Shown here one piece after another: positions 28,534 to 64,000 of a DNA stretch of 64,000 nt. Both the position numbers and the translations under genes were made by a program. The notes under the pieces were generated by a model. It was not told the origin of the DNA and searched no databases. It worked only from the letters and a program-made list of their open reading frames with translations. The first letter of the stretch is position 1, and every line of letters starts with the position of its first letter. Where the stretch lies: positions 1 through 64,000 of IMG/VR virus record IMGVR_UViG_3300044796_000657; one strand, written 5' to 3'.

Positions 28534-29030
28534 TTTTTTAAATAGCGAAACCCCTATAGGAAATTATTTTTTTCTTGGGTGTTAAACATAAAGTAGTCGT
28601 CCTTGCTGTGGGGTAGGGGGGTCACTGGTACCCTCGTCAGACCTTTTGATAAATAGTTAATTAGATGATTAGAATGCCACAACATATGCCTATACATGGT
28701 GTGTATGGTCACAACCCCCAGGCGTCGCTCGCACGCTCGCTTGACTGTCAGTGCGTGGTGGCGTGACCATACAGCATGTGTGTAAACCCTATGCGATACG
28801 CTGGCATGGGGCGGGTGTGAAATGGCAATGACAGTCGTTTGAATATCTTAGCCCTGCTTGTGACCATACATCCTTTGTCCTTATCCGTTAATGTTACCAA
28901 GACTTCATTGCTCGTGACCATACAACCTATGCCCCCCACTTCGCCGAGGTCGTGCGTCTTAGTAGTAGTGACCATACAATCATTGCTCTCGCTTTGATTG
29001 AGAGCAATGATTGTGACCATACACTAGATG

Positions 29031-29789
29031 TTAACCTACATTGCGTAAGTAGTTCCGCAACGTATCTACCTCGTCATAGTCCCCGCTTCCGTTATCATCA
29101 ATCCGTTGTAGAGCCGCAACGGTTAGGCGGCGCAGTTCGTCATAGTCCCGCTTTCGCTGTACGATTGCGTTTGCGGGGCGATCAGGGGCGGCGTGGGGTG
29201 TTTTACCCTTCGGCCCCCAAGCGGCCACCAGTTGCGGATAAGACGTAAAGGGCGTGGGATCTTTATCATCATCGTCAGTCCAAAAGAATGTGCGGCTCTT
29301 CCCCTCGCCCTTGGAACACTGGTCGGAAGGGCAACATACGAACCCCTTCCCCTTATTCCCGTTGCCTTTGGCCTTGACCGTGAACGGAACTAGATCGGCC
29401 CCTTCGCAGTTCGGGCAGAGTCGGCAATAGTTGACTTGGTTCGCCAACTTGCGTAGCATCGCCGTTAGGCGTTCTTCCCACCCCTTGACCCGTGTTACCC
29501 AGCGCTGCGACTTCCCCCCGTGGAAAGTCAAGATAGGCGGTTCCCCCGGCTTCGGGTTCGGCGTGATACTGACAATGCGGCCCCGTATGGAATCCTCACC
29601 GCAACCCTTGCTAGTATCGGCCCCGTCAACCGACGAACGGACTAGGATACCGTAGGGGATGGACGGGAACGGGCGAACTAGGTAAGTATGTTCGCCGAGA
29701 TTGAACCCGGCGTAAGTCCAAAGCGGTTGACCCTTCGGCGCTGGCAGAGCATCCTCAAACTCTTGTTTGGTAAAGTAATCAATAGGCAT
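29031..29789 (-). CDS. Protein with C-terminal GRF-type zinc finger
   Basis: CPNC...NKGKGFVCC...C...FFWTD; likely start MPIDYF. Confidence 0.7.
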   Translation of the reverse strand: MPIDYFTKQEFEDALPAPKGQPLWTYAGFNLGEHTYLVRPFPSIPYGILVRSSVDGADTSKGCGEDSIRGRIVSITPNPKPGEPPILTFHGGKSQRWVTRVKGWEERLTAMLRKLANQVNYCRLCPNCEGADLVPFTVKAKGNGNKGKGFVCCPSDQCSKGEGKSRTFFWTDDDDKDPTPFTSYPQLVAAWGPKGKTPHAAPDRPANAIVQRKRDYDELRRLTVAALQRIDDNGSGDYDEVDTLRNYLRNVG

Positions 29790-29880
29790 TGGATTTCCCC
29801 TAGTGACCATACATGGAATGTTAACTTGATTTTTTGTAGCTGCGATTAGGCCGAGGTCGTGACCATACAGTAGGTACTGC

Positions 29881-29912
29881 CCTAAGCCCCCCGGATAACC
29901 GGGGGGCTTAGG
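29881..29912. terminator. Perfect 14-bp hairpin downstream of the helicase
   Basis: CCTAAGCCCCCCGG-ATAA-CCGGGGGGCTTAGG. Confidence 0.75.
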
Positions 29913-29920
29913 TCGTTTAG

Positions 29921-31951
29921 TTATTCGTCGGCGAACATCTCACGGGGGGCGTTTTCCATGTCGCTCCCTGCGATGCGGTTGACCGTGAGCAAGAGCCGTT
30001 TACCCCGGCTTAGGGCAACGTGTCGGCAAGCGGCATCCTCCTCCGAGTCGCCCCAGCTTTCGTTGAACTTGGCGCTATCGTCCACGATTGCTACGTCTGC
30101 TTCGTCGCCCTTACAGCGATACACCGTAGTAAGAACACGGCGGGCCTTACGATCAGCGTAGTAGGCGATAAAGCGGCGCAAGTTGCCTACCGTGGCGATT
30201 GCTTCTAGGCCCGCTTTAACCAGCAACGTAGGATCGTCCTGAATTGCTTTTCCGAGTTCCAGAACAAAGCGCTCCATAGAATTCGGATCGGGTGCGCCCG
30301 TTTCCGCTGCTTCCGTTTCCGCTGCCATCTCTTCCAATTTTTTCAGGCATACGGCAAGGGTCGTGGGATATTCACCAGCGGTATCAGGCCACCCGGCGCC
30401 GTTGTAGATAAACCCGTCAATAATCCCCATGAAGCCATCGTTGCCACGGATACAACATTCTTGTTGTGATTTGAGCGTATCAATGAGCAGTTTGGATAGT
30501 GGGGCGTTCGTGCGAGTGATCCATAGTGCCGTTTCGCCGGGGGGGAGGTTGATCCAAGCGGTGAACGCTTGCGATTGATCCACGATCCACGCTTCCGACT
30601 TTCCAGCGGGAAGGGCCGATTGTATAACCGTATTGAGCGGACGATAGGCGGCGCAGATTTCCGGGCCGTGGCGGAAAGTTTTTGTTAGTTGCGCCCTCAC
30701 TGCTGCTTCACCCGTCAATTCTTCCCAGAGTCGCCCGATAAGGTTGAAGGAACCGCCAAAAGCGCCCCGCCAACCGTAGATAGCTTGACCCGCCTTATAT
30801 CCATCGTCGCCCGGTTGACCGCTGGCATCATCCCCGATAACGGCCAGCTCGCCGTTGCGGAACACCTGCGCCAGTATGACGGCGATTTGACATAGGGAAA
30901 GGTCTTGCCCTTCGTCAACGATAGCGCCCGGCAGTTGCGGAAGTTGTATCGTCCGTATGAGACTTGCGAAGTGGCGAACGTCATCATTCGTCCATTCGCT
31001 TGCTCGTTTGGATACGCAATCGAACCGCATTTTCCAACCAGTTCGGGAAATGGCATCGGCGACCGGGCGGGAGATTTGTTCGGCTAAGTCTACTTTCTTG
31101 CTAGTCTTATGCGAACGGCAGAGCATAGCGGGGAGATAGTCCCGAATGAGATCCATAGCGCCGTGAGTTTGTTCCGCTTTCCGTGCTAGACTTCCGAACC
31201 GTGTGAAAATGGCATTCACGCTATCGGCGAAAAAATTGGTATCGGTTTCGTCGGTCGTGAAGAGGCAAACGTCCCGCATACGTTCAACGATTTTTCCGAC
31301 GATACCCAACCGGGGGCGCTCGCCCTTTTCGAAGTTCGGTTCGGTCAATTCCTTCCAGAGATCATTGAGCTTTTTCGTATCATAGTTGCGACGGGTGAAG
31401 CCCTGCGCCCGCCCGTGCCACGAGTTGAGCGTAGCAACGTCGGGAAATTCAATCGGCAGTTTTTCCAAGGCGACGTTTGCGGCGTTTTTATTGAACGTGA
31501 GGAGCGGATACTTGAAGAGATCGCCCTTACGGCGCTTGTGGATTGATTGCGCCGACCAGCTAACCGTAGTGGTTTTAGCCGTTCCGGGTCCGGCGTCAAT
31601 GAGAAGCAAGCGGCCCCCACGTTGAGCGGGTTCTTGAGCGAATAGGGCGTTAATTTGATTCTGTTCGGCAGTGGGGCGGGCGATGATAGGCCACGTTTTA
31701 GCCCGTTCCACGACTTCGGCGGGAACGAACGTAGTGTTATTCCAGATAACCCCCTCACAACCGGACTTGATCCAGCTTTTGCCGACTTTCTTCACGCTGC
31801 CCTTAGAGCAACGGAACCCCTTACCGCTGCCCATTGGCACCATGCTTGCGCCGCAAGTAGGGCAGGAAATGATACCAGTAGCGGCACAACGGTTAGAATC
31901 AACCGTCGGCTTCTTGACCCGTGGCGTGAATGCCATAGCAGTAGTTCCCAT
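29921..31951 (-). CDS. UvrD/Rep-like SF1 helicase with N-terminal zinc ribbon
   Basis: AGPGTAKT (Walker A variant), LTFNKNAA, VDEGQD, GD...QAIYGWRGA, LTKTFR, TRTN, TVYRCKGDE, HVALSRGK; N-terminal CPTC...C...C. Confidence 0.9.
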   Translation of the reverse strand: MGTTAMAFTPRVKKPTVDSNRCAATGIISCPTCGASMVPMGSGKGFRCSKGSVKKVGKSWIKSGCEGVIWNNTTFVPAEVVERAKTWPIIARPTAEQNQINALFAQEPAQRGGRLLLIDAGPGTAKTTTVSWSAQSIHKRRKGDLFKYPLLTFNKNAANVALEKLPIEFPDVATLNSWHGRAQGFTRRNYDTKKLNDLWKELTEPNFEKGERPRLGIVGKIVERMRDVCLFTTDETDTNFFADSVNAIFTRFGSLARKAEQTHGAMDLIRDYLPAMLCRSHKTSKKVDLAEQISRPVADAISRTGWKMRFDCVSKRASEWTNDDVRHFASLIRTIQLPQLPGAIVDEGQDLSLCQIAVILAQVFRNGELAVIGDDASGQPGDDGYKAGQAIYGWRGAFGGSFNLIGRLWEELTGEAAVRAQLTKTFRHGPEICAAYRPLNTVIQSALPAGKSEAWIVDQSQAFTAWINLPPGETALWITRTNAPLSKLLIDTLKSQQECCIRGNDGFMGIIDGFIYNGAGWPDTAGEYPTTLAVCLKKLEEMAAETEAAETGAPDPNSMERFVLELGKAIQDDPTLLVKAGLEAIATVGNLRRFIAYYADRKARRVLTTVYRCKGDEADVAIVDDSAKFNESWGDSEEDAACRHVALSRGKRLLLTVNRIAGSDMENAPREMFADE

Positions 31952-32207
31952 TATATGGAACCACCTCCGTTTAGGCCGGAGTTAGCCTCAGCCCCTCTCT
32001 GTGGGCTTACCCGTATACTTGTATGGTCACAACCCCTCGGCGTCAAGTGAATTCTCAAAATTCGCCCTGCTTGTATGGTCACAATGGGGTCTGGCTATTA
32101 TCGGCCATGCTTGTATGGTCACAATTGCCTTTGAATGTTAACTGCCTTGCTTGTATGGTCACGGGTACTTAACCGCCCCCCGAAGGGGGGCGCAGTAGCG
32201 CCAGGGC

Positions 32208-32289
32208 GTGACCATACATACGCTGAAAGAAACGGGCTATCTTTGTCTTATGCCCTTGGCGAAGTCCTATTCATGGTGTGTATGGTCAC
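32208..32289. repeat. Inverted-pair element copy 1 (82 bp)
   Basis: GTGACCATACA-N5-TGAAAGAAACGG ... CTATTCA-N5-TGTATGGTCAC. Confidence 0.85.
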
Positions 32290-32400
32290 GACGGGGTGGC
32301 CCAATAAAAGCGAACCGATCCGGTTCGCCTATTGGGGTGTCTACCTATTGGCTTGTATGGTCACAGCCTCCTCATTCTGATGATCGTCCAAGTCAGATTG

Positions 32401-32631
32401 TCAGAGAGTATCACTACCGGGCATGGCCAGCGCTGGATCTTCGGGCATCACGGCATCATCGGCGATACGCACCCAATGCGTATATTTCATATCGAGGACG
32501 TTGCTGATTTCACCGATCTTGGCTTGTTCCATCCAAGTGATAATTTCACCATGTTGTGGCATCATCTTGCGGGCGTCTTCAAGTGTCAGCACTTCAGGCC
32601 ACGAATGATCGAGAACGAGGAACTTGGCCAT
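32401..32631 (-). CDS. Cassette ORFan
   Basis: AGGAG SD; lies between two sites. Confidence 0.75.
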   Translation of the reverse strand: MAKFLVLDHSWPEVLTLEDARKMMPQHGEIITWMEQAKIGEISNVLDMKYTHWVRIADDAVMPEDPALAMPGSDTL

Positions 32632-32676
32632 AATATTAACTCCTATTGGCGGGTTTACACCAATAGGGTTGTATGG

Positions 32677-32862
32677 TCACTCCAATTCCAAGAAGCATCG
32701 TCCGCCGATCACTTTGATGCTCTTGATATTGTAAGACGTTCCGGCTGGTTCGCATTGGGCGACAAGCGAAGTTTCGCCGTCAACTTCAATCTCCTCACCA
32801 GTGTCGGGGTCGTTGCCGTTCAAGAGCGATGATAGAGCGGCATGAAGTTCGTTCGGGTTCAC
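32677..32862 (-). CDS. Cassette ORFan
   Basis: GGAG SD + GTG; TGA stop is inside the site. Confidence 0.75.
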   Translation of the reverse strand: MNPNELHAALSSLLNGNDPDTGEEIEVDGETSLVAQCEPAGTSYNIKSIKVIGGRCFLELE

Positions 32863-32974
32863 GGCATAATCTCCAGAGCTTGGGTTTACACCAATAGGAC
32901 TGTATGGTCACTCACTGCCGTCTGCACTGGCAATCGTTGTGGGCTTGCACACGATCTATGCATGGTGCTGCACA

Positions 32975-33298
32975 CTAGCTTGGGCTATTCGCCTCGGATT
33001 GAATGACGAGAACGGCGACCCAATTACCCCGCTCATTCTTGGCGTATTGAACTTTGTTGAGGATGCCTTTATTGGCTTCCAAGCGGCGTAGGGCTTCCGT
33101 TCTCATTGCCCGGTAGCTGCCCACCATTTCAGGATAAACGGCGTTTGCGGTCGGCCAGTCCCAACCGCTGGTAATATCGCCGGGGCAATGATTCTGCTTT
33201 GCCGTGAAGGCAAGATAGGCCAGAACACGGTTAATGCCCTTGATTAATTGGGCATCCTTCATCTCACCAACGGGCTTCGGGAATTTTGGCTCTTTCAT
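32975..33298 (-). CDS. Cassette ORFan
   Basis: AAGGAG SD; 107 aa. Confidence 0.8.
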   Translation of the reverse strand: MKEPKFPKPVGEMKDAQLIKGINRVLAYLAFTAKQNHCPGDITSGWDWPTANAVYPEMVGSYRAMRTEALRRLEANKGILNKVQYAKNERGNWVAVLVIQSEANSPS

Positions 33299-33335
33299 GG
33301 CTGGTCTCCTTGTACCCGTTGGGTTGTATGGTCAC

Positions 33336-33550
33336 TCAGGCTACGTCTTCATGCGGTAGGTCGTCGCTATTGACGACGATAACGAGTTGATCGCCTTCCG
33401 AACCGCCCTTGCTGTAAACGACATTGAACAAACTGAAAGTTAAGTCAGGTTCGGTGCCGTGGTGAGACATGAGCAGAGTAGCGGGGCAATCATCGCTCAA
33501 GTGTTCATGGCTTTGCGAATATCCCCGACACTGACGGTGTGGACGGCCAT
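33336..33550 (-). pseudogene. Cassette ORFan with a 1-nt frameshift
   Basis: AAGGAG SD; MAVHTVSVGDIRKAM joins EHLSDDCPATLL...EDVA* if one G is added near 33505; 215 nt; stop abuts the site. Confidence 0.6.
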
Positions 33551-33584
33551 AACATTGTCTCCTTGTACCCGTTGGGTTGTATGG

Positions 33585-33821
33585 TCACTCCCATACAAGG
33601 CTAATGCCCTTGCGAGAGAGTTTGACACGGCGACGATCTTGGCGGGAAGGCTGAGGGCCGACATTGATGCGATACAGTTGATCCAATTCGGCACAAGCGG
33701 CATCATACTTCCGAAGGGCATGGACATAAGCAACGCCTTGCAGTCCATGAAGTTTGGCGCCGCATTCTTGTTTCTTGGCTTTGAGGCGGACCTTTTCGGC
33801 CTCATATTCGCTCTTGTTCAT
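33585..33821 (-). CDS. Cassette ORFan
   Basis: TGA stop inside the site. Confidence 0.75.
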   Translation of the reverse strand: MNKSEYEAEKVRLKAKKQECGAKLHGLQGVAYVHALRKYDAACAELDQLYRINVGPQPSRQDRRRVKLSRKGISLVWE

Positions 33822-33859
33822 GTTAACTCCACCCCTTTGATACTAGGGGGATTGTATGG

Positions 33860-34294
33860 TCACCCCTTGACGAATTCACCGGGTTGAGCATCAAAGAGCT
33901 TGCGGGCTTCTTTCAGCGTCGGGAACGATTCCCAGAATACCCGTTTGCCGTTGCCGAAATCGTGCTGCCGAACGTGAAAACAAGCGTGTTCGTGCCACAA
34001 GTCCGTATCGACGCTTTCTTCTGTGCTTTTGCGTTCAATGTAGCCACAAGCGAAGGAATAGGCCGTTAGGCGTCCATCCTTGCTACGGAAGCTTGGCGAC
34101 TTGTAATTGCGGCTGATTGCGTCCAGCATTTGAGCGTAGGAGCATTGCTTGGCGTGGATCATGCCCGTCAACGCTTTGTATTCGTCGGGGAGGCAAACGC
34201 TTTCAATGTAGTTCGCCCATCCTTGCGTGATAGGCGGCATCTTTGCCTTGCATTCGGCGATAATGGCGATTGCCCTTGCTTGTGAAATTCGCAT
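33860..34294 (-). CDS. Cassette ORFan
   Basis: GGGGAG SD; TGA stop inside the site. Confidence 0.8.
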   Translation of the reverse strand: MRISQARAIAIIAECKAKMPPITQGWANYIESVCLPDEYKALTGMIHAKQCSYAQMLDAISRNYKSPSFRSKDGRLTAYSFACGYIERKSTEESVDTDLWHEHACFHVRQHDFGNGKRVFWESFPTLKEARKLFDAQPGEFVKG

Positions 34295-34333
34295 TTCAAT
34301 TTCTCCCCGTTTGGTATCCAGTGGGATGTATGG

Positions 34334-34576
34334 TCACCGCAAAGAAACGGGTGCTATTGCCAGAATGAGGTCTTCACCCTTGGCCGTAATGTTAACTTGG
34401 CTATTGCCGTCCTTTTCCACTTCTTCCAGCAACTCGGCGATATTATCAGACTTATCGCCCAGACGATACGCCAGAACCAAAGCCTTATCAATGGCTTTCT
34501 GAAACGAATTGGCGTAATGAAGCTCCTGCAGCACGGCGATCCCATCCCGGCTGATGATTGCGACGATGAACAGCAT
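34334..34576 (-). CDS. Cassette ORFan
   Basis: GAGGGG SD + ATG 34576; TGA stop inside the site. Confidence 0.75.
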   Translation of the reverse strand: MLFIVAIISRDGIAVLQELHYANSFQKAIDKALVLAYRLGDKSDNIAELLEEVEKDGNSQVNITAKGEDLILAIAPVSLR

Positions 34577-34615
34577 TTCAATCCCCTCTTGGTACCACTT
34601 GGCTTGTATGGTCAC

Positions 34616-34834
34616 CTACTTCGGGTCCGACCACTGACCCATGACGATTTTTTCCTTGCCCGTCTTGGCTTTCTTGATCGCTTCCTTGGCCGATTCGGCT
34701 TCGACCTTGGCGATCCAATACATACCGGCGCTGAGACGATCCCGATTATCGCCGTCAATGTTCTTGTGAGTGCGATAGCCCCGACTCTTGGCAGGCCAAT
34801 TACTATAACACTCAACATAATAAATTTTCGGCAT
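34616..34834 (-). CDS. Cassette ORFan
   Basis: GAGGG SD; TAG directly abuts the site. Confidence 0.8.
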   Translation of the reverse strand: MPKIYYVECYSNWPAKSRGYRTHKNIDGDNRDRLSAGMYWIAKVEAESAKEAIKKAKTGKEKIVMGQWSDPK

Positions 34835-34897
34835 GACGAACCCTCTTAGTTAACATCACCGGTGTATGGTCACATTAAACATTAACATCCTGCCACC

Positions 34898-34980
34898 GTG
34901 ACCATACATGCTGTGAATAGGGCTTTGATTTACATTTGTATATCTTTATTCAAAGTCTTATTCATGGTGTGTATGGTCAC
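34898..34980. repeat. Inverted-pair element copy 2 (83 bp, near-perfect hairpin)
   Basis: 11-bp terminal inverted repeat plus TGAATAGGGCTTTGA/TCAAAGTCTTATTCA inner stem. Confidence 0.85.
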
Positions 34981-56300: not shown

Positions 56301-59094
56301 TGTCGTTGATACGTAAAGCGAATTCTTCGGTCATGGTGTGAGAGGGCTGCACAGTGAAGTCTTTATTCTTCACAGCAAGCCAACGCAGGGTGATGATCCT
56401 TTTGTCTTTGTCTTCAAAAGCAAAATCATCCACATTGTTAGCAGATTTGATGCGGTAGCCTTTGTAGTTCGCTTGCCAATTGGGCTTGTTGTAGACATAA
56501 TCAATAATTTCGGTGATTTGTGCTGGACTTGGATGCGGTTCAACTGCCACGACATAGTCTTTTTGATGAATATCTAACATGAATTCGTTGGTCATGTTGT
56601 CAATGTTAACATCAAGCCAATTGGGGATATTGACGCCATCCTTGGATACTGTGAAGTTGGTGACTCTGCTGGCGTGCCAATCCCAATTTGTTTTGATGGG
56701 CTTCTTGGTTTTTAGGTCAACGCTACCGTGTTCAGAAATTTCATAATGATGATCTTCAATGAATTGATAGCGTTTGGGAGGAGAGATTGCACGCCCCAAA
56801 TCAACAGTGTATGTGACTTTGTATGCTTTATTGGCGGCAAAGGCCAAGACCTTATAGGCTTGTGGCATGGTCATTCTATACAATAATAAGTTTTGATTTT
56901 CCCAATTAAGTTTCTCACCATTAGTGGTAGTCACATCAAATTTGTCAACGAAAGCCGCCGACCAATTGAACTCTTCTTTGTTGGCAAGATCGGTTGTATT
57001 TTCAGATTCGGCTAACTTGTAACCATTAGTCAGCGACCAAATCACACCCTTAAGTTTATTTGTGTATGTGACTTTGTATTGTTTGTGAGCTGCAAACCAT
57101 TTGATGACGGCAACTTGTTCGGCTGTGCAGAGTTTGGAAGCATCAGGCACTACGACTGACTTGGGTGTAATGATGAAATCCTTTATGTTATGATCAACAA
57201 ACGACTTAGCTTGTTGCTCAAAGCTCATGTAAAAGAGCCACTTTCCAGCTTCCTCCTTATTGGCGGTAATGATGTACTCCCCGATAGAAATGACACAAAC
57301 CTTGCAAGTAGTCACGTAGTGTTGATGAATGTTTGTTCCTGTGACGAGAGCCGTTTCTTTGTATTTGACCGTATCCCCTTTTTCGAGGGCTGCGTAGATC
57401 GATGTGATGAATTCGTTACGCATGTTGGGCGTTATCACGAAATCATTCATGTCAATCTCATTGAAGAATATCGCAGCAGACCGTGTTGTGATGTAGAAAT
57501 GTGATTCGTAGGCGCCGTCGGTGTAAATACTTGCGACAAGGTTGTTTGCACCTTGATAACTTACCACCTGCTTGTTCTTGATAGCAGCTTTGAGGCTTTC
57601 AGGGGTGTGGATAGATTTTGCGAAATGTTGAGGTGCGTGCTTTGGCGTATCGCTTTCAGAGGTGGGTTTTGCGAAATCACTTACATCAACATCCTTGAAG
57701 AAATATCTGCTTTTCATTACATCAAAGTGATAATTGCCCCAAGGATGATAAATCCCCAAATCAGCAATCTGAACGGGCAGAGTCGCAACTCCGACGATTC
57801 GACTGCGTTTGTATTGTGTGATTTCATTTTTGCTGATTTTCAGAATGAGATCCTTCAATTCGGTTTGTCGTTGCGTGAAGACATTCTTGTCTGTCACAAT
57901 GACATCTTTTTCATTTATTGTGGTACAGCATGTCCACTTGCCGTCTATGACGAAAAATGGCTTTCCGTCTTCTTCTGATATATTGTTAACTAAAACGCCC
58001 TTATAGGTGATTATGGACTGTTCAGCAGTTGGTTGAGCTTGAAATTGTTTGTAAAGTTTGACTGACCAATGTTCTTGTAGTGTGAAATCATTTATGTCAA
58101 CATCGCTAAAGAACGTAGCAATGTGTTGACTTGCGTGCTTTGGCGTATCATGAAAGAATGGCTGTCTATCATCGAGATAAATGCTGTATACAGTTTTGTC
58201 TTTGTATTTGATGATATGAGTTTCCAAAGCCTTTTTGAGACTTGCTGGAGTATGTCCTGATTTGTTTTCTGTGATCGTGAAATCCTTCATGTTAACATCG
58301 TTGAAAAACAACGTATACATTTCACTTCTGTAACCGAAAAACGAATTGCCATTACCCGGAATGGTAATGCTGGCAACGGGTCTGCCCTTGTATTGAACAA
58401 GGTGGTTGCCTTCCATTGCCGCCTTGAGGCCTTCAGGAGTGTGCGTGGATTGTTGTGGTAATGGGCGTTCTGTCCATTCAAAATCTCTGTATTGCTTGTT
58501 TGTCCATTCAATCCAACGACCGCCACATTGGAAACTATTGACACCTGCTCCCGTGACTTCTACGCCTAGATAAGTCGTCTTCCAAGTCGTGTACTTCTCG
58601 GATACGAATTTGATGATGTTGTCGATTTGTAATCCGGTTATGCATGGCGGATTAGAGAAGTCAACATAGTTAACATTCGCCCAATGATACGTGGTTTGAT
58701 TATCGCACGAAAATCTGTCATCGTCACTGTTATCATCATCGCTATTGATTTGGGAGATACGTTGTTTCTTATAAAACACTTCGCTGCCCGATTTGAAGCG
58801 GGCAATGATTTCAGCAATTTGCTCTTTGGTCATAGGTGGTTGGCCATTGACCCAGTCGATGGGTTGATCTTTTTTATCAAACACGGCGAAATGAGAAATT
58901 GATTGTCCAACACCAGCTTGGTGACCACCAGAACTGGAAGGGTATGATGAAATATAAAAAGTACCTATTTGATTTGCGTTGGCATTTCGTTTAAAACGAA
59001 GAACGGTTGAGCCACGAAAGAAAACTTTGTATTTGGAACTACTGCAGAAGTCGTAAAGTTTGTTGAAGAGAGCAAGCGTGATGATGTTGGACAC
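53308..59094 (-). CDS. Large tandem-module repeat protein (~1928 aa)
   Basis: AAGGA SD + GTG 59094; repeated MT(E/D)EFA..YKG..IEDY and FAANK.Y.VTYTN..W.W..VD.F.V.KDGVNIDW units. Confidence 0.9.
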   Translation of the reverse strand: MSNIITLALFNKLYDFCSSSKYKVFFRGSTVLRFKRNANANQIGTFYISSYPSSSGGHQAGVGQSISHFAVFDKKDQPIDWVNGQPPMTKEQIAEIIARFKSGSEVFYKKQRISQINSDDDNSDDDRFSCDNQTTYHWANVNYVDFSNPPCITGLQIDNIIKFVSEKYTTWKTTYLGVEVTGAGVNSFQCGGRWIEWTNKQYRDFEWTERPLPQQSTHTPEGLKAAMEGNHLVQYKGRPVASITIPGNGNSFFGYRSEMYTLFFNDVNMKDFTITENKSGHTPASLKKALETHIIKYKDKTVYSIYLDDRQPFFHDTPKHASQHIATFFSDVDINDFTLQEHWSVKLYKQFQAQPTAEQSIITYKGVLVNNISEEDGKPFFVIDGKWTCCTTINEKDVIVTDKNVFTQRQTELKDLILKISKNEITQYKRSRIVGVATLPVQIADLGIYHPWGNYHFDVMKSRYFFKDVDVSDFAKPTSESDTPKHAPQHFAKSIHTPESLKAAIKNKQVVSYQGANNLVASIYTDGAYESHFYITTRSAAIFFNEIDMNDFVITPNMRNEFITSIYAALEKGDTVKYKETALVTGTNIHQHYVTTCKVCVISIGEYIITANKEEAGKWLFYMSFEQQAKSFVDHNIKDFIITPKSVVVPDASKLCTAEQVAVIKWFAAHKQYKVTYTNKLKGVIWSLTNGYKLAESENTTDLANKEEFNWSAAFVDKFDVTTTNGEKLNWENQNLLLYRMTMPQAYKVLAFAANKAYKVTYTVDLGRAISPPKRYQFIEDHHYEISEHGSVDLKTKKPIKTNWDWHASRVTNFTVSKDGVNIPNWLDVNIDNMTNEFMLDIHQKDYVVAVEPHPSPAQITEIIDYVYNKPNWQANYKGYRIKSANNVDDFAFEDKDKRIITLRWLAVKNKDFTVQPSHTMTEEFALRINDTFTKCNMLYKGKRICGVSLLGKASDTVMEKIQINTVGVADFVQVKYTNIEDYTMPEGLLVSLEQIAKIKLFAANRVYEVTYTNPQVSNKLPTVPHFVTNGFKRESLNNHIDIAKTTWDWKISYVDNFKVTKDGVVIDWLNTEPEPTYNMTDEFANKIIFACRNMKCPRYKNEQIAYFAGLSNNLSVIEATEFVLVGKQYSPISILYTNMEDYEIFEPTYTMTEEFASRIHKIFTKCEMLYKGKRICALRPQGTVMEMLINTVDVGDAIEVRYTNIEDYTMPAVGEVVTAEQITKIRLLAANKVYEVTYTNPQMGNTLASAPYFLTSGFKRASVHTHIDLAKTSWGWSGCYVDNFKVTKDGVNIDWLDWLNTLPEPTYNMTDEFANKVALACRNSEYPKYQGNIISHFIGLNGDLEVVRGKGVGFVFAGKHTLIHNTNIEDYELKALTRITPEQIEKIKLFAANKAYQVSYNIQGTVTIYSLGNGYRSNKTQFPSGTSFMDLAKDHWNWESCYTEQFKVVKDGVNIDWQTAKATNMTEALAKQIFDAHWDHKEVKYKGIGLTGFNKGKGEVMSQVTYYYGFESPRKEILISEANIEDFTIEEEKKATQKSFNMTEEFAQKLFKANVCTVKYQGKQVTAMLRNVGDSKQSLIQHMTITVADDKYHTIVNVKETRIEDYIWPRIVVTMAQVEKLKLFAAHKHYRVTYTNDDKVKVWQFTNGYPHPINSAYNKDLADAAIMNCFNWKECYLDNFEVKEGDVNIDWQTTHPVIYFKVGVQVLENQIKYIKAFEGKVLYKNQEVTSMSGLFFYSTDANTPIYWNSTKYEDFAFIPKINISDEQIRFLIDGLKNHHTQIRYKGQQIFCYASSIDGSFTMASGPVVGCFWWKNVNFSDFSIKDTTPTITTSDNANVCSSTKSAEEIGFAYENFLRTFAHRRKWDTGDIGSIIAKIREAKFYGDNNEQDVHFIATANGWLWAKIGTEKLEEEIANLIKALEVEVAN

Positions 59095-59322
59095 GGTAGA
59101 TTCCTTGTGGATGTTAACGGTAGATTGTGGATGTCGCCAACCAATGTAACAGGGAAGATCCATTGGCATGACTGGTTCTCAAAATATAAGGAGGTCTTGG
59201 ATGGAACAGAAAAAGAAGCCACCTCGCATGAAAACCATAAAGCGGTTCCCCGATGGATACGCTTTACATTCGTGGGTTTCTTCCGTCAGTATGTCATAGT
59301 AAATGGCGTTCATGGCAATCCT

Positions 59323-59535
59323 TTACATGAGAACAACGGTTAGTATTACACTTGCCACATATGTCAGTAATCCGCATGTGTAAACCACTCTGCGAATCCA
59401 CCAACGATCACTCCGAGACACATCCTTCGTTATGAGATTGAAAGCGATCAAATCCACAATCGCAAAAATAATTGTGAGGATCAGGAAAACAATTAAGATT
59501 GCGCCGACAAAATCCGGGGAGGAGATTTTGGACAT
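59323..59535 (-). CDS. Two-TM membrane protein
   Basis: AAGGA SD; two hydrophobic helices. Confidence 0.75.
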   Translation of the reverse strand: MSKISSPDFVGAILIVFLILTIIFAIVDLIAFNLITKDVSRSDRWWIRRVVYTCGLLTYVASVILTVVLM

Positions 59536-59919
59536 TTCAACATCCTTTTAGGGATTAGAAGCCCTTGTCTTCCCGTTACTTGAGGCAAATGGCAACAATG
59601 AAAGCAATGGCAAGGGCAAACTTCCACATTGCTGCAACGAAGTGGAGAGGGTTGTAGTGTTTGGCCGTCGATGAATAGTGAAAACTCACCAGTCCGCTCA
59701 CGAAAAAGTGAACAACAGCAATAATCAACATGATCTGGACAAAAGTATTCATCGGAGCCTCATGATGTTAAGTCTTAGGATGTGCCAAACAATTAAGGCG
59801 CATACCATTGTTTTGAAAGTCCAAGACAACGCAGACTCGATAGTAAATGCGGCTTTGCCCCACGGCAGGATGATTGCCAACAATGCCAGTATTGCAAGAA
59901 TGCTGTTCATTGTTAACCC

Positions 59920-60150
59920 TTACTTGATTGCCTTTTTGAGTTTGCCAGTGATGCTGATGCGGCGGTAGATGCCATGTTTGTGTTGGCACTGCTCGCAACC
60001 GCAATCGTTGCATTTCAGGCAAACGTAAATTTGTTTATTGTTACGCTGTGTCATTTCGCCGTAGCACTTTTCACACCACAAACGATCAGGCCAGAAGAAG
60101 CCCATCCACAACGAAACCACACGCTTGTAAACCTTAATAAACTTTTCCAT
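59920..60150 (-). CDS. Cys-rich hypothetical protein
   Basis: CEKC, CLKCNDCGCEQC. Confidence 0.65.
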   Translation of the reverse strand: MEKFIKVYKRVVSLWMGFFWPDRLWCEKCYGEMTQRNNKQIYVCLKCNDCGCEQCQHKHGIYRRISITGKLKKAIK

Positions 60151-60174
60151 GACCAAACCCTCAGTGTGGGCTAG

Positions 60175-60203
60175 ATCGTATCATATTCCATTCTTTTTGT
60201 CAA
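60175..60203 (-). promoter_or_regulatory. Sigma70-type promoter
   Basis: TTGACA-17-TACGAT on the - strand. Confidence 0.7.
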
Positions 60204-60215
60204 GCAAAAAATGTG

Positions 60216-60560
60216 TTATTTTTCTTCTTTTGTAAGGCGATTGTATTCGTCTGATATTGAACGGAGATCACCATGAATTTCCTTGCTTAAATTACGTCGC
60301 ATGTCATCTTCGATTGACCACGCCATTTCTAGGATTTTGGCAAGCGTTCCGAGTTGTAAAGATGTGAGAGTGTGTTCCTCAATGCCGATACGATGGGCGT
60401 TGTCGATGCCGTACAGGAAGCCACCAACGGCACTAACCGAACGACATTTTGCGTCGTAGTGAAGCCGTGAGCGTTCCATGAGGAAGTCGATTTCCTCTTG
60501 GGTGAATTCAATGATGATTTTAACTTCGTAGTCAAATTCTTTCGTTTTCATATAGCCCAT
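60216..60560 (-). CDS. Hypothetical protein
   Basis: 114 aa, overlaps the upstream stop. Confidence 0.75.
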   Translation of the reverse strand: MGYMKTKEFDYEVKIIIEFTQEEIDFLMERSRLHYDAKCRSVSAVGGFLYGIDNAHRIGIEEHTLTSLQLGTLAKILEMAWSIEDDMRRNLSKEIHGDLRSISDEYNRLTKEEK

Positions 60561-61177
60561 ATTTCTTCGGTGGTAGGAGTGCGGCCTAATTCAACAATCA
60601 ATGCCTTTTGGAGGTTTTCCAATCGTTCTGTTTCAATGACAATCTGCGCCCCATTGCGACCTTCGGTGACATTTTCCAAGTCTAGTTCAGCACCACGCAA
60701 GTCGCCGAAGATTTCAGCATCGGCTCTTTTAACTTTCTTCGGAATGGGTGCGGTGGCAGCTTGATCGGCCTTTAGGATGGCATTTTTAACCAAATCCAAA
60801 GGTGCCCGGTAAATTTTGCCGTTTTCTGCTGATACTTCAATTACGTTCTTTTCGCCCTTCGGCAAGATGCCAGTGATGATTGCTTTGATAATTTTACGAC
60901 CAACTCTGATTTCAATGGTCTTACGAAAGTCTTCCAATCGCAAGCCGAAAAGTTCATGGTATTTGTGAAATGCGGTTTCGCTTGGCGAAGTCGTCGGGGC
61001 TTTGTCAGTGCCGAAATCGACTTCAATGGTCGTGCGAAGACTTTTGGCTGAATAACGAATGGTGCCGAAGCGAATGTTAATTTTCAGTTCGGCATTGAGA
61101 GGAGCCAAAACGGCCTTGATCCGGTCTGAAACCTTTTTGGCTTGGCTTTCGTTCCATTTGTCTGCTTTGGTACTCAT
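60548..61177 (-). CDS. Hypothetical protein
   Basis: GGAG SD; 209 aa. Confidence 0.8.
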   Translation of the reverse strand: MSTKADKWNESQAKKVSDRIKAVLAPLNAELKINIRFGTIRYSAKSLRTTIEVDFGTDKAPTTSPSETAFHKYHELFGLRLEDFRKTIEIRVGRKIIKAIITGILPKGEKNVIEVSAENGKIYRAPLDLVKNAILKADQAATAPIPKKVKRADAEIFGDLRGAELDLENVTEGRNGAQIVIETERLENLQKALIVELGRTPTTEEIWAI

Positions 61178-61398
61178 ACAATCTCCAATAGATGTTGGAT
61201 CATTTGGTCGGCAGTTACCGGCTTTGCCTTACTCCCACACGAACAACACAGAGAGCATTCTTCGCAGTTAAGGCAAGCCCCGGTTGCTTTCTTGTTCTGT
61301 TTGTGGCCGTATTGTTTGCCACAACCGGGACAAGCAGTATCCTCTTTCGGCAAACCGTGTGATGAAATATCAAGGCCAGTAAGATTATCCTTTGCCAT
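61174..61398 (-). CDS. Zinc-binding hypothetical protein
   Basis: CPGC, CLNCEECSLCCSC. Confidence 0.75.
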   Translation of the reverse strand: MAKDNLTGLDISSHGLPKEDTACPGCGKQYGHKQNKKATGACLNCEECSLCCSCGSKAKPVTADQMIQHLLEIV

Positions 61399-61430
61399 GA
61401 CACTCCCCTATTACCTTTTAGGGTGTATGG

Positions 61431-62297
61431 TCACCAACCATTGATATAAGGCAAAAACGGATAGTAAACACGTACATTGACATGATTACTTTTCATGATG
61501 CGTAGAATGTCTTCCATTCTCATTGCCTTGAAAATCGCATCAGCCATCCATACGGGACAATTAGCCCACAATTCATAAGTTCCATCACCACTATTGCGAA
61601 GACTGCCATTAGTCTCATACGGAACAAAACGAAGTTCGGCAGTGAAGCCCAAACTGGTAAGTGTTGTATGGTGTGGTGTCAATGCGCCACGGGCATACTT
61701 TCCCGCTCCATACCCTTGCGATGAATAAGAATACGTTGAGGATGTGTCAAGCAGTTGAGGTTCACCGCCAACAATCGGCGTTACTTGTTTGGCAAGCGAC
61801 CACAATAAATCCTCACGTTCTTTCTTTTGTTTGGCAAGTTGAGCATCGTATTCACTGATCTTGTACTTGGTTAACAATCTATTCTTCAACGCTTCAATGA
61901 AAGCATCGTCCAGAGGATCAAGGTTTTTCTTCTTGGGTTGACGACGCTTTTGCTCTTGTAATAGGAGTTGAGTGAATTCCTTCTGCGCCGTTTCTTTGGT
62001 TGTTTTGAAAGTGGCGTAAAATGTGCTTTTGAATGGGTCTTGCTCGTATGCTGCTTTGTATTGTTCGTTTGGTGTGCCTGATACACTCAACGTTAACAGC
62101 GGAGCAATTTCAATGGGCTTGACTGCTTTGACTTGCGGCTTAGTTGAAAGGAGATCGTAATTGCAGAAATCACAGATGATCGTGCCTTCAGGGATGCGAT
62201 TGAGGCATCCGGGGCATTCGTCCATTGTGAAATCGTAACCACATTGGCATACTTCGCCTTGCGGTCGTGCTTTACATTGTGGACAAGTAGTAATCAT
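61431..62297 (-). CDS. Protein with N-terminal double zinc ribbon
   Basis: CPQC..CQCG..CPGC..CDFC; TGA stop inside the site. Confidence 0.8.
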   Translation of the reverse strand: MITTCPQCKARPQGEVCQCGYDFTMDECPGCLNRIPEGTIICDFCNYDLLSTKPQVKAVKPIEIAPLLTLSVSGTPNEQYKAAYEQDPFKSTFYATFKTTKETAQKEFTQLLLQEQKRRQPKKKNLDPLDDAFIEALKNRLLTKYKISEYDAQLAKQKKEREDLLWSLAKQVTPIVGGEPQLLDTSSTYSYSSQGYGAGKYARGALTPHHTTLTSLGFTAELRFVPYETNGSLRNSGDGTYELWANCPVWMADAIFKAMRMEDILRIMKSNHVNVRVYYPFLPYINGW

Positions 62298-62315
62298 ACC
62301 AATAGGGATGTATGG

Positions 62316-62681
62316 TCACAGACCGCCCGACTTCTTGAGAACACGCCCGTTAACGGCATTGCCAATTTTTTGCTGTGAAACTTTGATTTTAGGCAGTTTG
62401 CGTTTACCAGCCCACTTCAGCATTGTAGGCGTCAAGATAATCGTTGCGTTTGGATCTTTTGAACCAATCGTAATGATACTAGCGTAGAAGCTCACCCTTG
62501 CCTCAGTGTTGGCCAATCGCATGATCTTCTCAATGATTGCTGTGGTTTCGGCTTCATTGAGTTTGGGGAATGTATCACCACGCTGAAATGCCGGAATCAA
62601 ATCAATGATTCCTTGTCTTGTCGCAACAGCTTGAGCAGCCCTAGCAGGATCGCTCAAGTCGTTTAGTTCTGGGAATGGCAT
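62316..62681 (-). CDS. Cassette ORFan
   Basis: AAGGAG SD; TGA stop inside the site. Confidence 0.8.
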   Translation of the reverse strand: MPFPELNDLSDPARAAQAVATRQGIIDLIPAFQRGDTFPKLNEAETTAIIEKIMRLANTEARVSFYASIITIGSKDPNATIILTPTMLKWAGKRKLPKIKVSQQKIGNAVNGRVLKKSGGL

Positions 62682-62915
62682 GTTAACTCTCCTTTTGAAC
62701 ATTCTCAAACAAAGTACGGAGAACCATAGAGACTTCGCTGTTTTCGCAATCGTTAGCAATGTCGTCAAATCCAAGTTGTAGATCAGGCTCATCGTATTGG
62801 TATGCAAAATTGAGAATTCGCATAACAGTACCGAGAGCCAACAACTAGCTTTTCAGGCGTTCATGATCAACGGTAGCAAATAACTGTTTAAGAGGCTTGC
62901 GTGTACTTGTCATGA

Positions 62916-63128
62916 TTATCTCATACATTGGAAGGGAACGGCAGTGACGTTGATGCTGATGTCATCTGATTTGATGGGGCAAATGACATCACTTGCGATT
63001 TTTTTGGCATGGTCTGCATTCTGAATGCCTTGGACGCCAGAGTTAAGGTAAAACGTAGGCACTTGATGCGTCAAATCGCCTTTTGCTGTGTGATGAACAA
63101 CAGTGGCATCAATGGCATATAGTAGCAT
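62916..63128 (-). CDS. Cassette ORFan
   Basis: AGGGAG SD + ATG 63128. Confidence 0.75.
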   Translation of the reverse strand: MLLYAIDATVVHHTAKGDLTHQVPTFYLNSGVQGIQNADHAKKIASDVICPIKSDDISINVTAVPFQCMR

Positions 63129-63165
63129 GACGTTCTCCCTTATAACCATGTGGGTGTATGGTCAC

Positions 63166-63513
63166 TCATATCATGGGATCAAAGGCAAGGAAAGTGTTAA
63201 ACTTAGGCCATTGTAAATGAGTTGCTAAGTCTTTGTTTTTATTGGCCCACTTGGTATTACAAGCGTAACAAGCCATAACAGTGTTAGGTCGTTCTATAAA
63301 AAGTTCTATATCATCAAATAGAACCCAAACACCATCAAGTGCCCCACCCTTACTAACAGGTCGTATATGTTCAACTGTTGCCATATAATCAGGAAATTGT
63401 ATCCCTTGAGGCTGCGGTTGCGGCAACTCCGTTAAACCAAAACACCAGAAGCATGTTCCCATTTGCTTGAAGAACAAATTATCCAATACCTCTCGCTTTC
63501 TCTTGCTTCCCAC
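63166..63513 (-). CDS. HNH endonuclease
   Basis: CFWC...ATVEHIRPVSKGG...N.V.AC..CN; TGA abuts the site. Confidence 0.85.
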   Translation of the reverse strand: MGSKRKREVLDNLFFKQMGTCFWCFGLTELPQPQPQGIQFPDYMATVEHIRPVSKGGALDGVWVLFDDIELFIERPNTVMACYACNTKWANKNKDLATHLQWPKFNTFLAFDPMI

Positions 63514-63657
63514 GACAGTTTCCTATTTTAATTCAACATCAATTTTACATGATGTTAAGGTTACCACGGAATGGTATTCGGCTTTGACTCGTATTTGCTT
63601 GTGCTGACATCCTGCAAGCAACAAGATAAGCATCCATGCTTTCATTTGAACCTTTCG

Positions 63658-63927
63658 TTAGTTGATGCCAAGTGCGTGATAATTGGCCCGCACATCGGCC
63701 ATATGGTTTCGGTAAATGTTTGTGTGATTCGGCAACACGCTGACCAGATCATTACGGTGAACTTGAAACAGTTGGGGATACTGCCGAGGGTTGATACCGT
63801 ATTTCACCTTAACCTCTTCAACAGTGAGGTATCCCGGCGATGGCATCCAAGCAGTCTTGCAAACAACCTCCAGAATGATCGCTTCACGACTTCCGGGTTC
63901 AGGAATTTGGCTGAATGCTGCTGCCAT
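63658..63927 (-). CDS. Cassette ORFan
   Basis: GAGGGG SD directly after the 63958 site. Confidence 0.7.
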   Translation of the reverse strand: MAAAFSQIPEPGSREAIILEVVCKTAWMPSPGYLTVEEVKVKYGINPRQYPQLFQVHRNDLVSVLPNHTNIYRNHMADVRANYHALGIN

Positions 63928-64000
63928 GATAAAGCCCCTCGTTGTTAACCATAAGGGTGTATGGTCACGTTATAGTTCAGGGGAAAATTCACAGATGTTG

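What the first reader, a model, noticed from the sequence alone, without database searches (positions are those of the whole stretch)
28702..63968. Gene-cassette array punctuated by at least 68 copies of GTGACCATACA
Seen: 54 exact minus-oriented and 14 plus-oriented copies of one 11-mer, against about 0.03 expected by chance (128000/4^11). Most copies sit in short intergenic gaps, point in the direction of transcription, and separate short unrelated ORFans. The repeating unit is [site - SD - ORF - stop/site]. In about 17 genes the TGA of the site is the stop codon (e.g. 33585, 33860, 34334, 35147, 35384, 35652, 37317, 37622, 38887, 40436, 44583, 49215, 50005, 50316, 61431, 62316). In 6 more the stop abuts the site or lies within 2 nt. 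Established precedents: integron attC cassettes (stop codon often within the inverse core), mycobacteriophage L5 stoperators (oriented asymmetric repressor sites at gene junctions), and T4-type PeSL regulatory cassettes. The sequence matches none of those consensus motifs. Inference: this is an undescribed phage cassette-shuffling platform, or a genome-wide operator/promoter network for early genes.
Basis: partly seen in the sequence, partly recalled or inferred. Interest (0 to 1): 0.93.

Follow-up and report, generated by a model that had tools for sequence, protein, structure and literature searches.

The report
Megaphage promoter-like 11-mer before small genes
An exact 11-base signal repeated about 100 times in a giant uncultivated phage is most likely a phage-specific promoter that starts transcription of many small early genes; it is a real and striking motif, but of a familiar kind, not an integron-like gene-cassette system.

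Summary
GTGACCATACA occurs 68 times (54 minus, 14 plus) against 0.02 expected. The window is the first 64 kb of a phage contig of at least 614 kb, and the first 98 kb hold 93 exact copies with no degenerate variants.

The best reading is a non-sigma70, phage-specific promoter class.
- The motif ends 25-33 nt (or 37-45 nt) before start codons. That is the same geometry as the -10 boxes of the canonical TTGACA-17-TATAAT promoters in other gaps of this genome.
- All seven minus-strand intrinsic terminators in 28-98 kb are followed 20-25 nt later by a sense copy, forming composite terminator/promoter units.
- Four diverged relatives (helicase 55-66% identical, GC 42-60%) keep the same 11-mer and layout. 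A fifth has TTATCCATACA, so the core is invariant and the upstream four bases are lineage-specific.

The TGA stop overlaps reflect tight gene packing. No recombinase or attC-like structure was found. The small genes do turn over and rearrange between relatives, as in T4-type PeSL regions.

Still unexplained: conserved antisense site arrays bracketing the helicase operon, and which polymerase reads the motif.

The parts
4988..4998 (+). Isolated sense copy 42 nt upstream of a plus-strand gene (5041-5694). A second isolated plus copy lies at 21885-21895.
28702..28712 (-). Sense copy downstream of the helicase operon and upstream of an HNH endonuclease gene (28198-28533). It forms a divergent pair with the plus copy at 28763. 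The site and about 60 nt of flank are conserved at the DNA level in relative L044.
28763..29023 (+). Array of five antisense-oriented copies (28763, 28860, 28914, 28968, 29013) in an ORF-free stretch, facing the 3' end of the 252-aa gene. An equivalent antisense array is present in L278, L044 and L280.
29031..29789 (-). Conserved 252-aa gene with a GRF-like zinc ribbon. It is the partner of the helicase in all five lineages.
29803..29869 (+). Two antisense copies between the helicase and the 252-aa gene. The same arrangement is seen in L278 (3 copies) and L044 (2 copies, first base A).
29921..31936 (-). UvrD-like SF1 helicase with an N-terminal zinc ribbon. It is the core gene used to find relatives.
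32020..32162 (-). Four tandem sense copies (spacing 40, 40 and 52 bp) upstream of the helicase start. Tandem sense arrays with about 46-bp spacing are seen in L278 and L044.
32152..32289 (.). Repeated ~130-bp module: terminator, sense copy, ~60 nt, antisense copy, ~25 nt, sense copy. Further modules lie at 34863-34980, 40235-40354 and 45878-45983. Antisense copies carry their own conserved tail, TGAAAGAAACGG.
32354..44586 (-). Densest run: about 40 sense copies, one in front of most small ORFan genes. Each typically ends 25-33 or 37-45 nt before the start codon and is followed by nnC..AT.GGTTAAC and a Shine-Dalgarno sequence. 15 of them contain the TGA stop of the upstream gene.
43092..43227 (-). 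Three tandem sense copies between a terminator (43271-43252) and a sigma70-like promoter (43005-42978), in front of the ParB-HTH gene (41585-42928).
45532..47032 (.). ORF-poor 1.5 kb holding five minus and two plus copies, a sigma70-like promoter (46936-46908) and a sharp change in GC and AT skew.
49208..63968 (-). Eight sparser sense copies (49208, 49998, 50309, 52008, 61424, 62309, 63155, 63958) at operon starts. The series continues beyond the window.
39964..39989 (-). One of seven minus-strand intrinsic terminators, each followed 20-25 nt later by a sense copy. The others are 46034-46005, 43271-43252, 41564-41538, 40913-40897, 40408-40379 and 32328-32310.

Best explanation
GTGACCATACA is the core of a phage-specific, non-sigma70 promoter class in an uncultivated megaphage (contig of at least 614 kb).

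**Proposed mechanism.**
- It is read as double-stranded DNA by a phage-encoded RNA polymerase, or by host polymerase carrying a phage sigma or specificity factor.
- The 11-mer sits where a -10 region would sit.
- Transcription is inferred to start about 5-7 nt downstream, near a semi-conserved A. This gives a ~20-nt leader that carries the Shine-Dalgarno sequence.
- Most small early genes have their own copy, packed against the previous gene, so the motif's TGA often serves as that gene's stop.
- Wherever transcription is terminated, a copy 20-25 nt later restarts it.
- Canonical sigma70 promoters in other gaps form a separate class, presumably read by host polymerase as immediate-early promoters.

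**Shown:** motif statistics, spacing, the link to terminators, conservation in relatives, and the existence of two promoter-like classes.

**Inferred:** that the motif is a promoter, the start-site position, its temporal class, and which polymerase reads it.

A likely by-product is that the shared motif and leader favour recombinational turnover of ORFans, as with T4-type PeSLs.
For: 1. **All-or-none motif.** 93 exact copies, 1 one-mismatch and 15 two-mismatch copies in 98 kb, the last two at or below chance. Virion-RNAP early promoters of the giant phage AR9 are similarly described as highly sensitive to deviation: one predicted AR9 early promoter that differs at a single position has no transcription start (PMC5312081).
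2. **Co-orientation and spacing.** Copies point with the downstream gene, and the motif end lies 25-33 or 37-45 nt before the start codon. The spacing is 27-33 nt in L044 and about 28 nt in L281.
3. **Same geometry as sigma70 promoters.** About 14 canonical TTGACA-17-TAnnnT promoters in the same genome have their -10 end 23-40 nt (mostly 23-36) before the start codon.
4. **Terminators.** All 7 minus-strand terminator-like hairpins in 28-98 kb are followed by a sense copy at 20-25 nt. The chance per position is 0.4%. The same arrangement occurs once each in L044 and L278. This leaves no room for another promoter.
5. **No flanking promoter.** Information content upstream of the motif is zero, and there is no sigma70 -35/-10 around it.
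6. **Conservation.** The same 11-mer occurs at high density in L278/L279, L044 and L280 (helicase 66, 58 and 55% identical; GC 42-60%). L281 (52% identical) has T(T/A)ATCCATACA. An invariant core with a lineage-specific upstream tetranucleotide is the pattern known for T7/T3/SP6/K11 promoters (general knowledge).
7. **Dual promoters.** Some genes carry both classes, for example the ParB-like gene and the copy at about 82.2 kb followed by TTGACA-17-TATAAT. AR9 genes with two promoter classes behave likewise.
Against: - There are no transcript data, so no start site is shown.
- No RNA polymerase or sigma gene was identified. Only about 150 kb of the 614-kb genome could be read, and ORFs of 125 aa or more in 28-98 kb gave no such Pfam hit.
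- The very constant distance to the Shine-Dalgarno sequence would be at least as natural for an RNA-level leader element.
- Conserved arrays of antisense copies between and downstream of the helicase-operon genes, and tandem arrays with about 46-bp periodicity, look more like protein-binding arrays (iterons or operators) than promoters. As promoters they would fire against essential genes.
- The base after the motif is often C, which is unusual for a start site directly at the motif end.
Confidence: 0.65

Rival explanations
1. The copies are operator or stoperator-like binding sites for one phage DNA-binding regulator. The protein would be a repressor or roadblock, or a replication initiator binding iterons. 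It would bind the asymmetric 11-mer at gene junctions, with high-affinity arrays around the helicase operon.
For: - The site is asymmetric and oriented with transcription in intergenic gaps.
- Tandem arrays have 40-56 bp spacing.
- Inverted arrays bracket the helicase and 252-aa operon and are conserved in four lineages.
- A ParB-HTH protein and a small HTH protein are encoded nearby.
Against: - There is no promoter next to most copies for a repressor to act on.
- A copy follows every terminator at 20-25 nt, where a roadblock has nothing to stop.
- Spacing is tied to start codons and matches that of the sigma70 -10 boxes.
- There is no sign of lysogeny: no integrase was found, and the helicase has no relative in 185,579 bacterial and archaeal species genomes.
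- The copies are concentrated in one part of the genome rather than spread across all lytic operons.
Confidence: 0.14
2. The motif acts as RNA: a leader element in the 5' UTR. It would be a cleavage site for a phage endoribonuclease that cuts polycistronic RNA into monocistronic messages, or a binding site for a translational regulator or an antisense RNA carrying UGUAUGGUCAC.
For: - The distance to the Shine-Dalgarno sequence and start codon is very constant, and the strand bias is strict.
- Exactness without a degenerate halo would suit base pairing.
- Antisense copies could supply the complementary RNA, and the modules fold into long hairpins.
Against: - Copies placed 20-25 nt after terminators would rarely be transcribed.
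- About a third of sense copies, and all the arrays, have no start codon within 60 nt.
- There is no conserved hairpin around the motif. Mean folding energy is -5.5 against -4.3 kcal/mol for shuffled flanks.
- Rfam has no match.
Confidence: 0.1
3. The motif is a site-specific recombination site of an integron-like cassette platform. Units of the form [site-gene] would be excised and inserted by a dedicated recombinase.
For: - The units repeat as site-SD-ORF-stop, the ORFans are unrelated, and a stop codon lies inside the site.
- The small-gene content differs and is not collinear between relatives.
Against: - No recombinase gave a Pfam hit among the ORFs of 125 aa or more that I scanned in 28-98 kb, or in the genes called on the JGI contig.
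- The 11-mer is not part of an imperfect palindrome.
- Copies also flank conserved core genes in a conserved layout, follow terminators, and occur in tandem arrays.
- The same motif is kept across lineages of 55-66% protein identity, as a regulatory signal would be.
Confidence: 0.03
4. The copies are strand-specific nick sites, localized single-strand interruptions as in T5 or phiKMV-like phages, made by a phage nickase such as the HNH enzyme encoded next to the arrays.
For: - The motif is exact, oriented and almost strand-specific.
- An HNH endonuclease gene lies at 28198-28533.
Against: A nick site gives no reason for fixed spacing to start codons or to terminators. Nick motifs known from memory are not confined to gene starts. 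This could not be tested here.
Confidence: 0.03

Closest known systems
Virion-RNAP early promoters of phiKZ-like jumbo phages (AR9: AAATATATATTAT-N6-G+1; PMC5312081)
   Same: - Dozens of copies of an extended, highly conserved element occur before small early genes of a giant phage.
- In AR9, a predicted early promoter that differs from the consensus at one position has no transcription start.
- The start site lies a fixed ~6 nt downstream.
- Some genes carry promoters of two classes, and some antisense promoters exist.
   Different: - The motif here is not AT-rich and has an unrelated sequence.
- Canonical sigma70 promoters coexist with it, so host polymerase is probably used as well.
- No multisubunit phage RNAP has been found in the part of the genome read so far.
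- The phage has no detectable relative among cultured phages.
T4-type PeSL composite terminator/promoter cassettes (PMC2839356, PMC4122927)
   Same: - Compact terminator-plus-promoter units flank ORFans in hyperplastic regions.
- Gene content turns over between relatives while the regulatory element stays constant.
   Different: - PeSL promoters are sigma70-type early promoters; the 11-mer is not.
- Only 7 of about 78 sense copies have the stem-loop.
- Recombination at the motif is not demonstrated here.
T7/T3/SP6/K11 single-subunit RNAP promoters
   Same: - An invariant core lies just upstream of the presumed start, with a short lineage-specific specificity segment (GTGA against TTAT before CCATACA).
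- Copies within one genome are near-identical.
- 8 of 12 positions match SP6's GTGACACTATAG; this comparison is from memory and is only a lead.
   Different: - Only 11 bp are conserved, against about 23.
- There is no AT-rich -17 to -13 segment.
- The base after the motif is often C, not G.
- No T7-like RNAP gene has been identified.
Cluster A mycobacteriophage stoperators
   Same: Asymmetric short sites, many per genome, in short intergenic gaps, oriented with transcription, often touching stop codons.
   Different: - The sequence is different.
- Stoperators tolerate mismatches and belong to temperate phages with an immunity repressor and an integrase or parABS system.
- Here there is no lysogeny signal, spacing is fixed to start codons, and the copies follow terminators.
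Cluster K mycobacteriophage start-associated sequences (SAS)
   Same: A conserved motif lies at a fixed distance upstream of many start codons.
   Different: SAS includes the ribosome-binding site itself and lies 3-8 nt from the start (from memory). Here the motif is about 28 nt upstream and is separate from the Shine-Dalgarno sequence.

Membership tests
Integron attC cassette array | The site is an imperfect inverted repeat (R''-L''...L'-R') that folds as a hairpin. | tested here: not met
   There is no consistent hairpin around the copies. Folding is barely better than with shuffled flanks. Only the first 11 nt are conserved.
Integron attC cassette array | An adjacent IntI tyrosine recombinase with attI and the Pc promoter. 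| tested here: not met
   No recombinase gave a Pfam hit among the ORFs of 125 aa or more scanned in 28-98 kb, or in the JGI gene calls. The rest of the 614-kb genome was not read.
Cluster A stoperators | Asymmetric sites in intergenic gaps, oriented with transcription. | tested here: met
Cluster A stoperators | A temperate phage with an immunity repressor that binds the sites. | tested here: inconclusive
   No integrase or repressor was recognised. The helicase has no relative in bacterial genomes. Protein binding is not testable with these tools.
T4-type PeSL | A composite of a stem-loop terminator and a promoter. | tested here: met
   7 of 7 terminators are followed by a copy at 20-25 nt. 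Most copies, however, have no stem-loop.
T4-type PeSL | The promoter is a sigma70-type early promoter. | tested here: not met
   There are no -35/-10 hexamers at the copies. Canonical sigma70 promoters lie elsewhere.
T4-type PeSL | The elements flank variable ORFans in hyperplastic regions, and indels between relatives have breakpoints at the element. | tested here: inconclusive
   Turnover and non-collinearity are shown. Breakpoints could not be mapped because the nearest distinct relative has only 66% helicase identity. L043 is 99.99% identical.
Jumbo-phage vRNAP early promoters | An extended, highly conserved element intolerant of mismatches, before early genes. | tested here: met
   comparison with PMC5312081
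Jumbo-phage vRNAP early promoters | An AT-rich consensus, and a genome that encodes split beta/beta' RNAP subunits. | tested here: not met
   The motif has 5 G+C in 11 bases. No RNAP hit was found in the parts read. Most of the genome is unread, so the RNAP half of this feature is really untested.
T7-like single-subunit RNAP promoters | A conserved core next to the start site with lineage-specific specificity positions. | tested here: met
   GTGA-CCATACA in four lineages, TTAT-CCATACA in L281
T7-like single-subunit RNAP promoters | The genome encodes a T7-like RNAP, and the start site is at the motif's 3' edge. | not testable with these tools

The most novel reading that the evidence does not exclude
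The 11-mer is a single 'digital' address read in two ways by one dedicated phage factor.
- In sense orientation it starts transcription of each ORFan.
- In the conserved antisense and tandem arrays that bracket the helicase operon and fill ORF-free stretches (28.7-29.0, 32.0-32.4 and 45.8-47.1 kb), it works differently: either as R-loop or replication-origin promoters, or as an insulator or roadblock.
- Its shared sequence is also the recombination joint that lets megaphages swap ORFans.
Probability: 0.12. Interest if true: 0.7.

Novelty: new member of a known kind. Interest (0 to 1): 0.45.

Why it matters
Megaphages over 500 kb are known only from metagenomes, and their gene regulation is essentially unstudied.
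- An exact 11-mer that marks about 100 transcription units gives a ready handle for defining operons and a temporal class.
- It allows a search for the cognate polymerase or sigma factor by co-variation (GTGA against TTAT lineages).
- It helps recognise fragments of this clade in metagenomes.
- The coexistence of canonical sigma70 promoters with the 11-mer class predicts a T7- or T4-like hand-over from host to phage-directed transcription.
- An orthogonal, mismatch-intolerant promoter and polymerase pair would also be useful as a tool.
- The hyperplastic ORFan region is a place to look for host-takeover and anti-defence genes.

Tried and rejected
- **Hairpin at the site.** I considered an N4-type promoter, a REP/RAYT element or an RNase site. 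Some copies pair ACCAT with ATGGT, but most do not. Rejected.
- **Host sigma70 promoter.** No hexamers fit, and a weak TAnGGT 4 nt downstream would place the start site inside the Shine-Dalgarno sequence. Rejected.
- **MITE-like reading of the inverted pairs.** The modules are conserved functional units with terminators in relatives. Not pursued further.
- **1928-aa ORF as a giant RNAP.** It is an internal-repeat protein with no PDB, Pfam or PHROG hit.
- **Searches that found nothing.**
  - Megablast of 20 kb, tblastn of the helicase, and blastn of a site plus leader against 50,697 phage records: nothing related.
  - Literature search for the motif string: only unrelated PCR primers.
None of the 120 loci has two or more copies.
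  - Helicase profile against GTDB genomes: no relative.
- **Uninformative comparisons.**
  - L043, from another sample, is 99.99% identical.
  - The 252-aa neighbour shows only a GRF-like zinc ribbon.
  - More distant helicase relatives (L045/46, L047, L049; 36-48% identical) show no comparable motif.

Full report
**Observation**

GTGACCATACA occurs 68 times in the window (54 minus, 14 plus) against 0.02 expected from shuffles. Only one single-mismatch variant exists in the window.

The window equals bases 1-64000 of IMG/VR contig IMGVR_UViG_3300044796_000657 (430 kb). That contig is part of JGI contig Ga0480561_0000004, which is 614,480 bp. I joined the fetched pieces into bases 1-97789. They contain 93 exact copies (78 minus, 15 plus), 1 one-mismatch copy (chance 1.5) and 15 two-mismatch copies (chance 23). 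The motif therefore has no degenerate halo. Sparser minus-strand copies continue to at least 172 kb.

**Anatomy**

A simple gene map puts plus-strand genes at 0.35-28.1 kb and minus-strand genes from 28.2 kb onward. It agrees with the JGI gene calls.
- Copies point with the genes.
- The 3' end of the motif lies 25-33 nt (27 cases) or 37-45 nt (18 cases) before the next start codon.
- Upstream of the motif there is no sequence information. Downstream there is a weak nnC..AT.GGTTAAC, followed by the Shine-Dalgarno sequence.
- Only 51 of 141 minus-strand genes have a copy within 60 nt upstream of the start. Overlapping or abutting genes lack one, so the copies mark unit starts.
- In 18 junctions the motif's TGA is the stop of the upstream gene. 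In 5 the stop abuts or overlaps the site by one base, and in 4 the ORF reads through the site for a few codons.
- TGA use (18 of 27 tight junctions) exceeds the one-third expected from frame alone. That is what packing genes against a signal containing TGA would give.

**Two promoter-like classes**

Many gaps without the 11-mer hold textbook TTGACA-17-TAnnnT promoters. Examples begin at 3230, 8294, 24414, 60203, 65248, 73015, 74415, 75656, 79072, 82182 and 86383. Their -10 hexamer ends 23-40 nt (mostly 23-36) before the start codon. The 11-mer occupies the same place. By analogy the 11-mer sits in the -10 region, and transcription would begin about 6 nt downstream. An A is semi-conserved there (position +6 after the motif: 59 of 109 in this genome, 23 of 41 in L044).

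**Terminators**

On the minus strand of 28-98 kb there are seven G+C-rich hairpins followed by a T-run. Every one is followed by a sense copy 20-25 nt after the stem: 46034-46005, 43271-43252, 41564-41538, 40913-40897, 40408-40379, 39989-39964 and 32328-32310. Only 0.4% of positions lie that close behind a terminator. One such pair each is seen in L044 and L278. The genes behind these terminators have no other conserved element in front of them. This is the strongest sequence-only argument that the motif restarts transcription. It also weakens RNA-level readings.

**Relatives**

The UvrD-like helicase (29921-31936) has relatives only in raw metagenome assemblies. None were found among cultured phages or in 185,579 species genomes.

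| Locus | Helicase identity | GC | Motif |
|---|---|---|---|
| L278/L279 | 66% | 53-57% | GTGACCATACA, 17 copies in 5 kb |
| L044 | 58% | 42% | GTGACCATACA, 35 copies in 14 kb |
| L280 | 55% | 60% | GGTGACCATACAGC, 20 copies, plus a few CCATATA variants |
| L281 | 52% | 37.5% | T(T/A)ATCCATACAGA, 22 sense copies of the core CCATACA |
| L047, L049, L045/46 | 36-48% | - | no comparable motif |

- The spacing to start codons is kept: 27-33 nt in L044 and about 28 nt in L281.
- An invariant core with a lineage-specific tetranucleotide, maintained across very different base compositions, points to a conserved, co-evolving reader. The pattern is the one known for T7-group promoters (general knowledge).
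- AR9 and phiKZ virion-polymerase promoters show a comparable sensitivity to deviation and a fixed start 6 nt downstream (PMC5312081).

**Cassette question**

- The small genes are mutually unrelated, with four paralogous pairs in the site-rich region, and have no family hits.
- Of about 20 small genes upstream of the helicase, L044 shares 7 with this genome, L280 shares 4 and L281 shares none.
- The shared genes lie at scattered, non-collinear positions: 38, 45, 48, 69, 80 and 83.5 kb.
- The helicase and its 252-aa partner are always adjacent.
- This is a hyperplastic ORFan region with a constant regulatory element. It resembles T4-type regions with PeSL terminator/promoter cassettes (PMC2839356, PMC4122927).
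- It is not integron-like. No recombinase was recognised in the ORFs scanned across 98 kb, there is no attC-type palindrome, and the copies also frame conserved core genes.
- Whether recombination occurs at the motif cannot be tested. The only close relative (L043) is 99.99% identical.

**Unexplained**

The helicase operon is bracketed in a conserved way in four lineages. The window has:
- 4 tandem sense copies upstream of the helicase (relatives have 4-6);
- 2 antisense copies between the helicase and the 252-aa gene (2-3 in L044 and L278, none in L280);
- 5 antisense copies downstream (2-3 in the relatives);
- a final sense copy.

Four ~130-bp modules recur: terminator, sense copy, antisense copy, sense copy. 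Their antisense copies carry a conserved tail, TGAAAGAAACGG. At 40269 the antisense copy is followed about 110 nt later by a bidirectional terminator. That would define a small antisense transcript.

As promoters these copies would give antisense RNA or R-loops, comparable to the promoter-dependent origins of T4 and T7 (general knowledge). As protein-binding arrays they would favour the operator or iteron rival. The polymerase or factor that reads the motif is unknown.

**Verdict**

The motif is real, extends well beyond the window, and is conserved in a clade of uncultivated megaphages.

| Reading | Confidence |
|---|---|
| Phage-specific promoter class forming compact (terminator-)promoter-leader units before ORFans | about 0.65 |
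| Operator or stoperator-like binding site | 0.14 |
| RNA leader element | 0.10 |
| attC-like recombination site | 0.03 |
| Nick site | 0.03 |

It is a new member of a known kind, of moderate interest.

Noticed in passing
window 3230-3258, 8294-8322, 24414-24442 (+); 60203-60175, 53298-53270, 46936-46908, 43005-42978 (-); further ones at 65-97 kb of the contig: Canonical sigma70-type promoters (TTGACA, 16-18 nt spacer, TAnnnT) lie 23-36 nt upstream of start codons. They are a second, separate promoter class, probably immediate-early and read by host polymerase. One drives a D12-class adenine methyltransferase at 73.0-74.4 kb.
   Followed up: partly
window minus strand, 5' ends at 39957, 44175, 44253, 44968, 47785, 48252; also L044:774, L280:1368, 2735: A second conserved intergenic 18-mer, GTGTGCAGnTAGTGTGCC, made of two GTGTGC repeats one helical turn apart. 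It usually sits just after a stop codon or about 20 nt before a start, sometimes next to the 11-mer. It is conserved in relatives; its function is unknown.
   Followed up: partly
whole window and contig to 98 kb: The palindromic hexamer GTTAAC occurs 98 times against about 28 expected. More than half the copies are inside genes. ATGTTAAC occurs 31 times in the window and is often the element 4-5 nt downstream of the 11-mer in the arrays.
   Followed up: partly
window 53308-59094 (-): A 1928-aa protein built of many internal repeats, with recurring NIEDY/DF and KLFAANKxYxVTYTN-like blocks. It has no Pfam, PHROG or PDB sequence match.
   Followed up: partly
window 24740-28097 (+): A tandem family of about nine paralogous 58-186-aa genes (most about 80-100 aa) on the plus strand, without the 11-mer. 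It converges on the minus-strand region at about 28.1 kb.
   Followed up: no
window 44000-52000: A sharp composition change without a change of coding strand. GC skew is -0.27 at 44-46 kb and +0.31 at 48-50 kb, and AT skew falls to -0.39. The stretch 45783-47377 is ORF-poor. This is possibly an origin or foreign DNA.
   Followed up: no
window 28198-28533 (-); 29031-29789 (-): An HNH endonuclease gene lies at the end of the leftward region. The 252-aa partner of the helicase has a GRF-like zinc ribbon, and in L281 it shows weak similarity to the helicase N-terminus.
   Followed up: partly
window 11566-11638, 13191-13264 (+); L081:799-871 (-); L007:9016-9382 (-): The phage encodes tRNA-Lys, tRNA-Arg and tRNA-Met. 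ARAGORN also predicts a tmRNA with tag VEPELRMAA at about 131 kb of the contig.
   Followed up: no
L081:7378-8073, L073:866-1348, L081:10800-11450, L122:3426-4976, L095:2098-3312: Auxiliary genes in the site-bearing region: a poly(A) polymerase/CCA-adding-type nucleotidyltransferase, a Nudt16-like Nudix enzyme, an RNase H-like protein, an aldehyde dehydrogenase and a fragment-like arginyl-tRNA synthetase.
   Followed up: no
L045 (NCBI JBAMKY010023257.1, 554,746 bp): A distant relative (helicase 36% identical) is another phage-like contig over 550 kb. It has an intein-containing gene and a Cas12f/TnpB-like ORF near the helicase, and no 11-mer.
   Followed up: no
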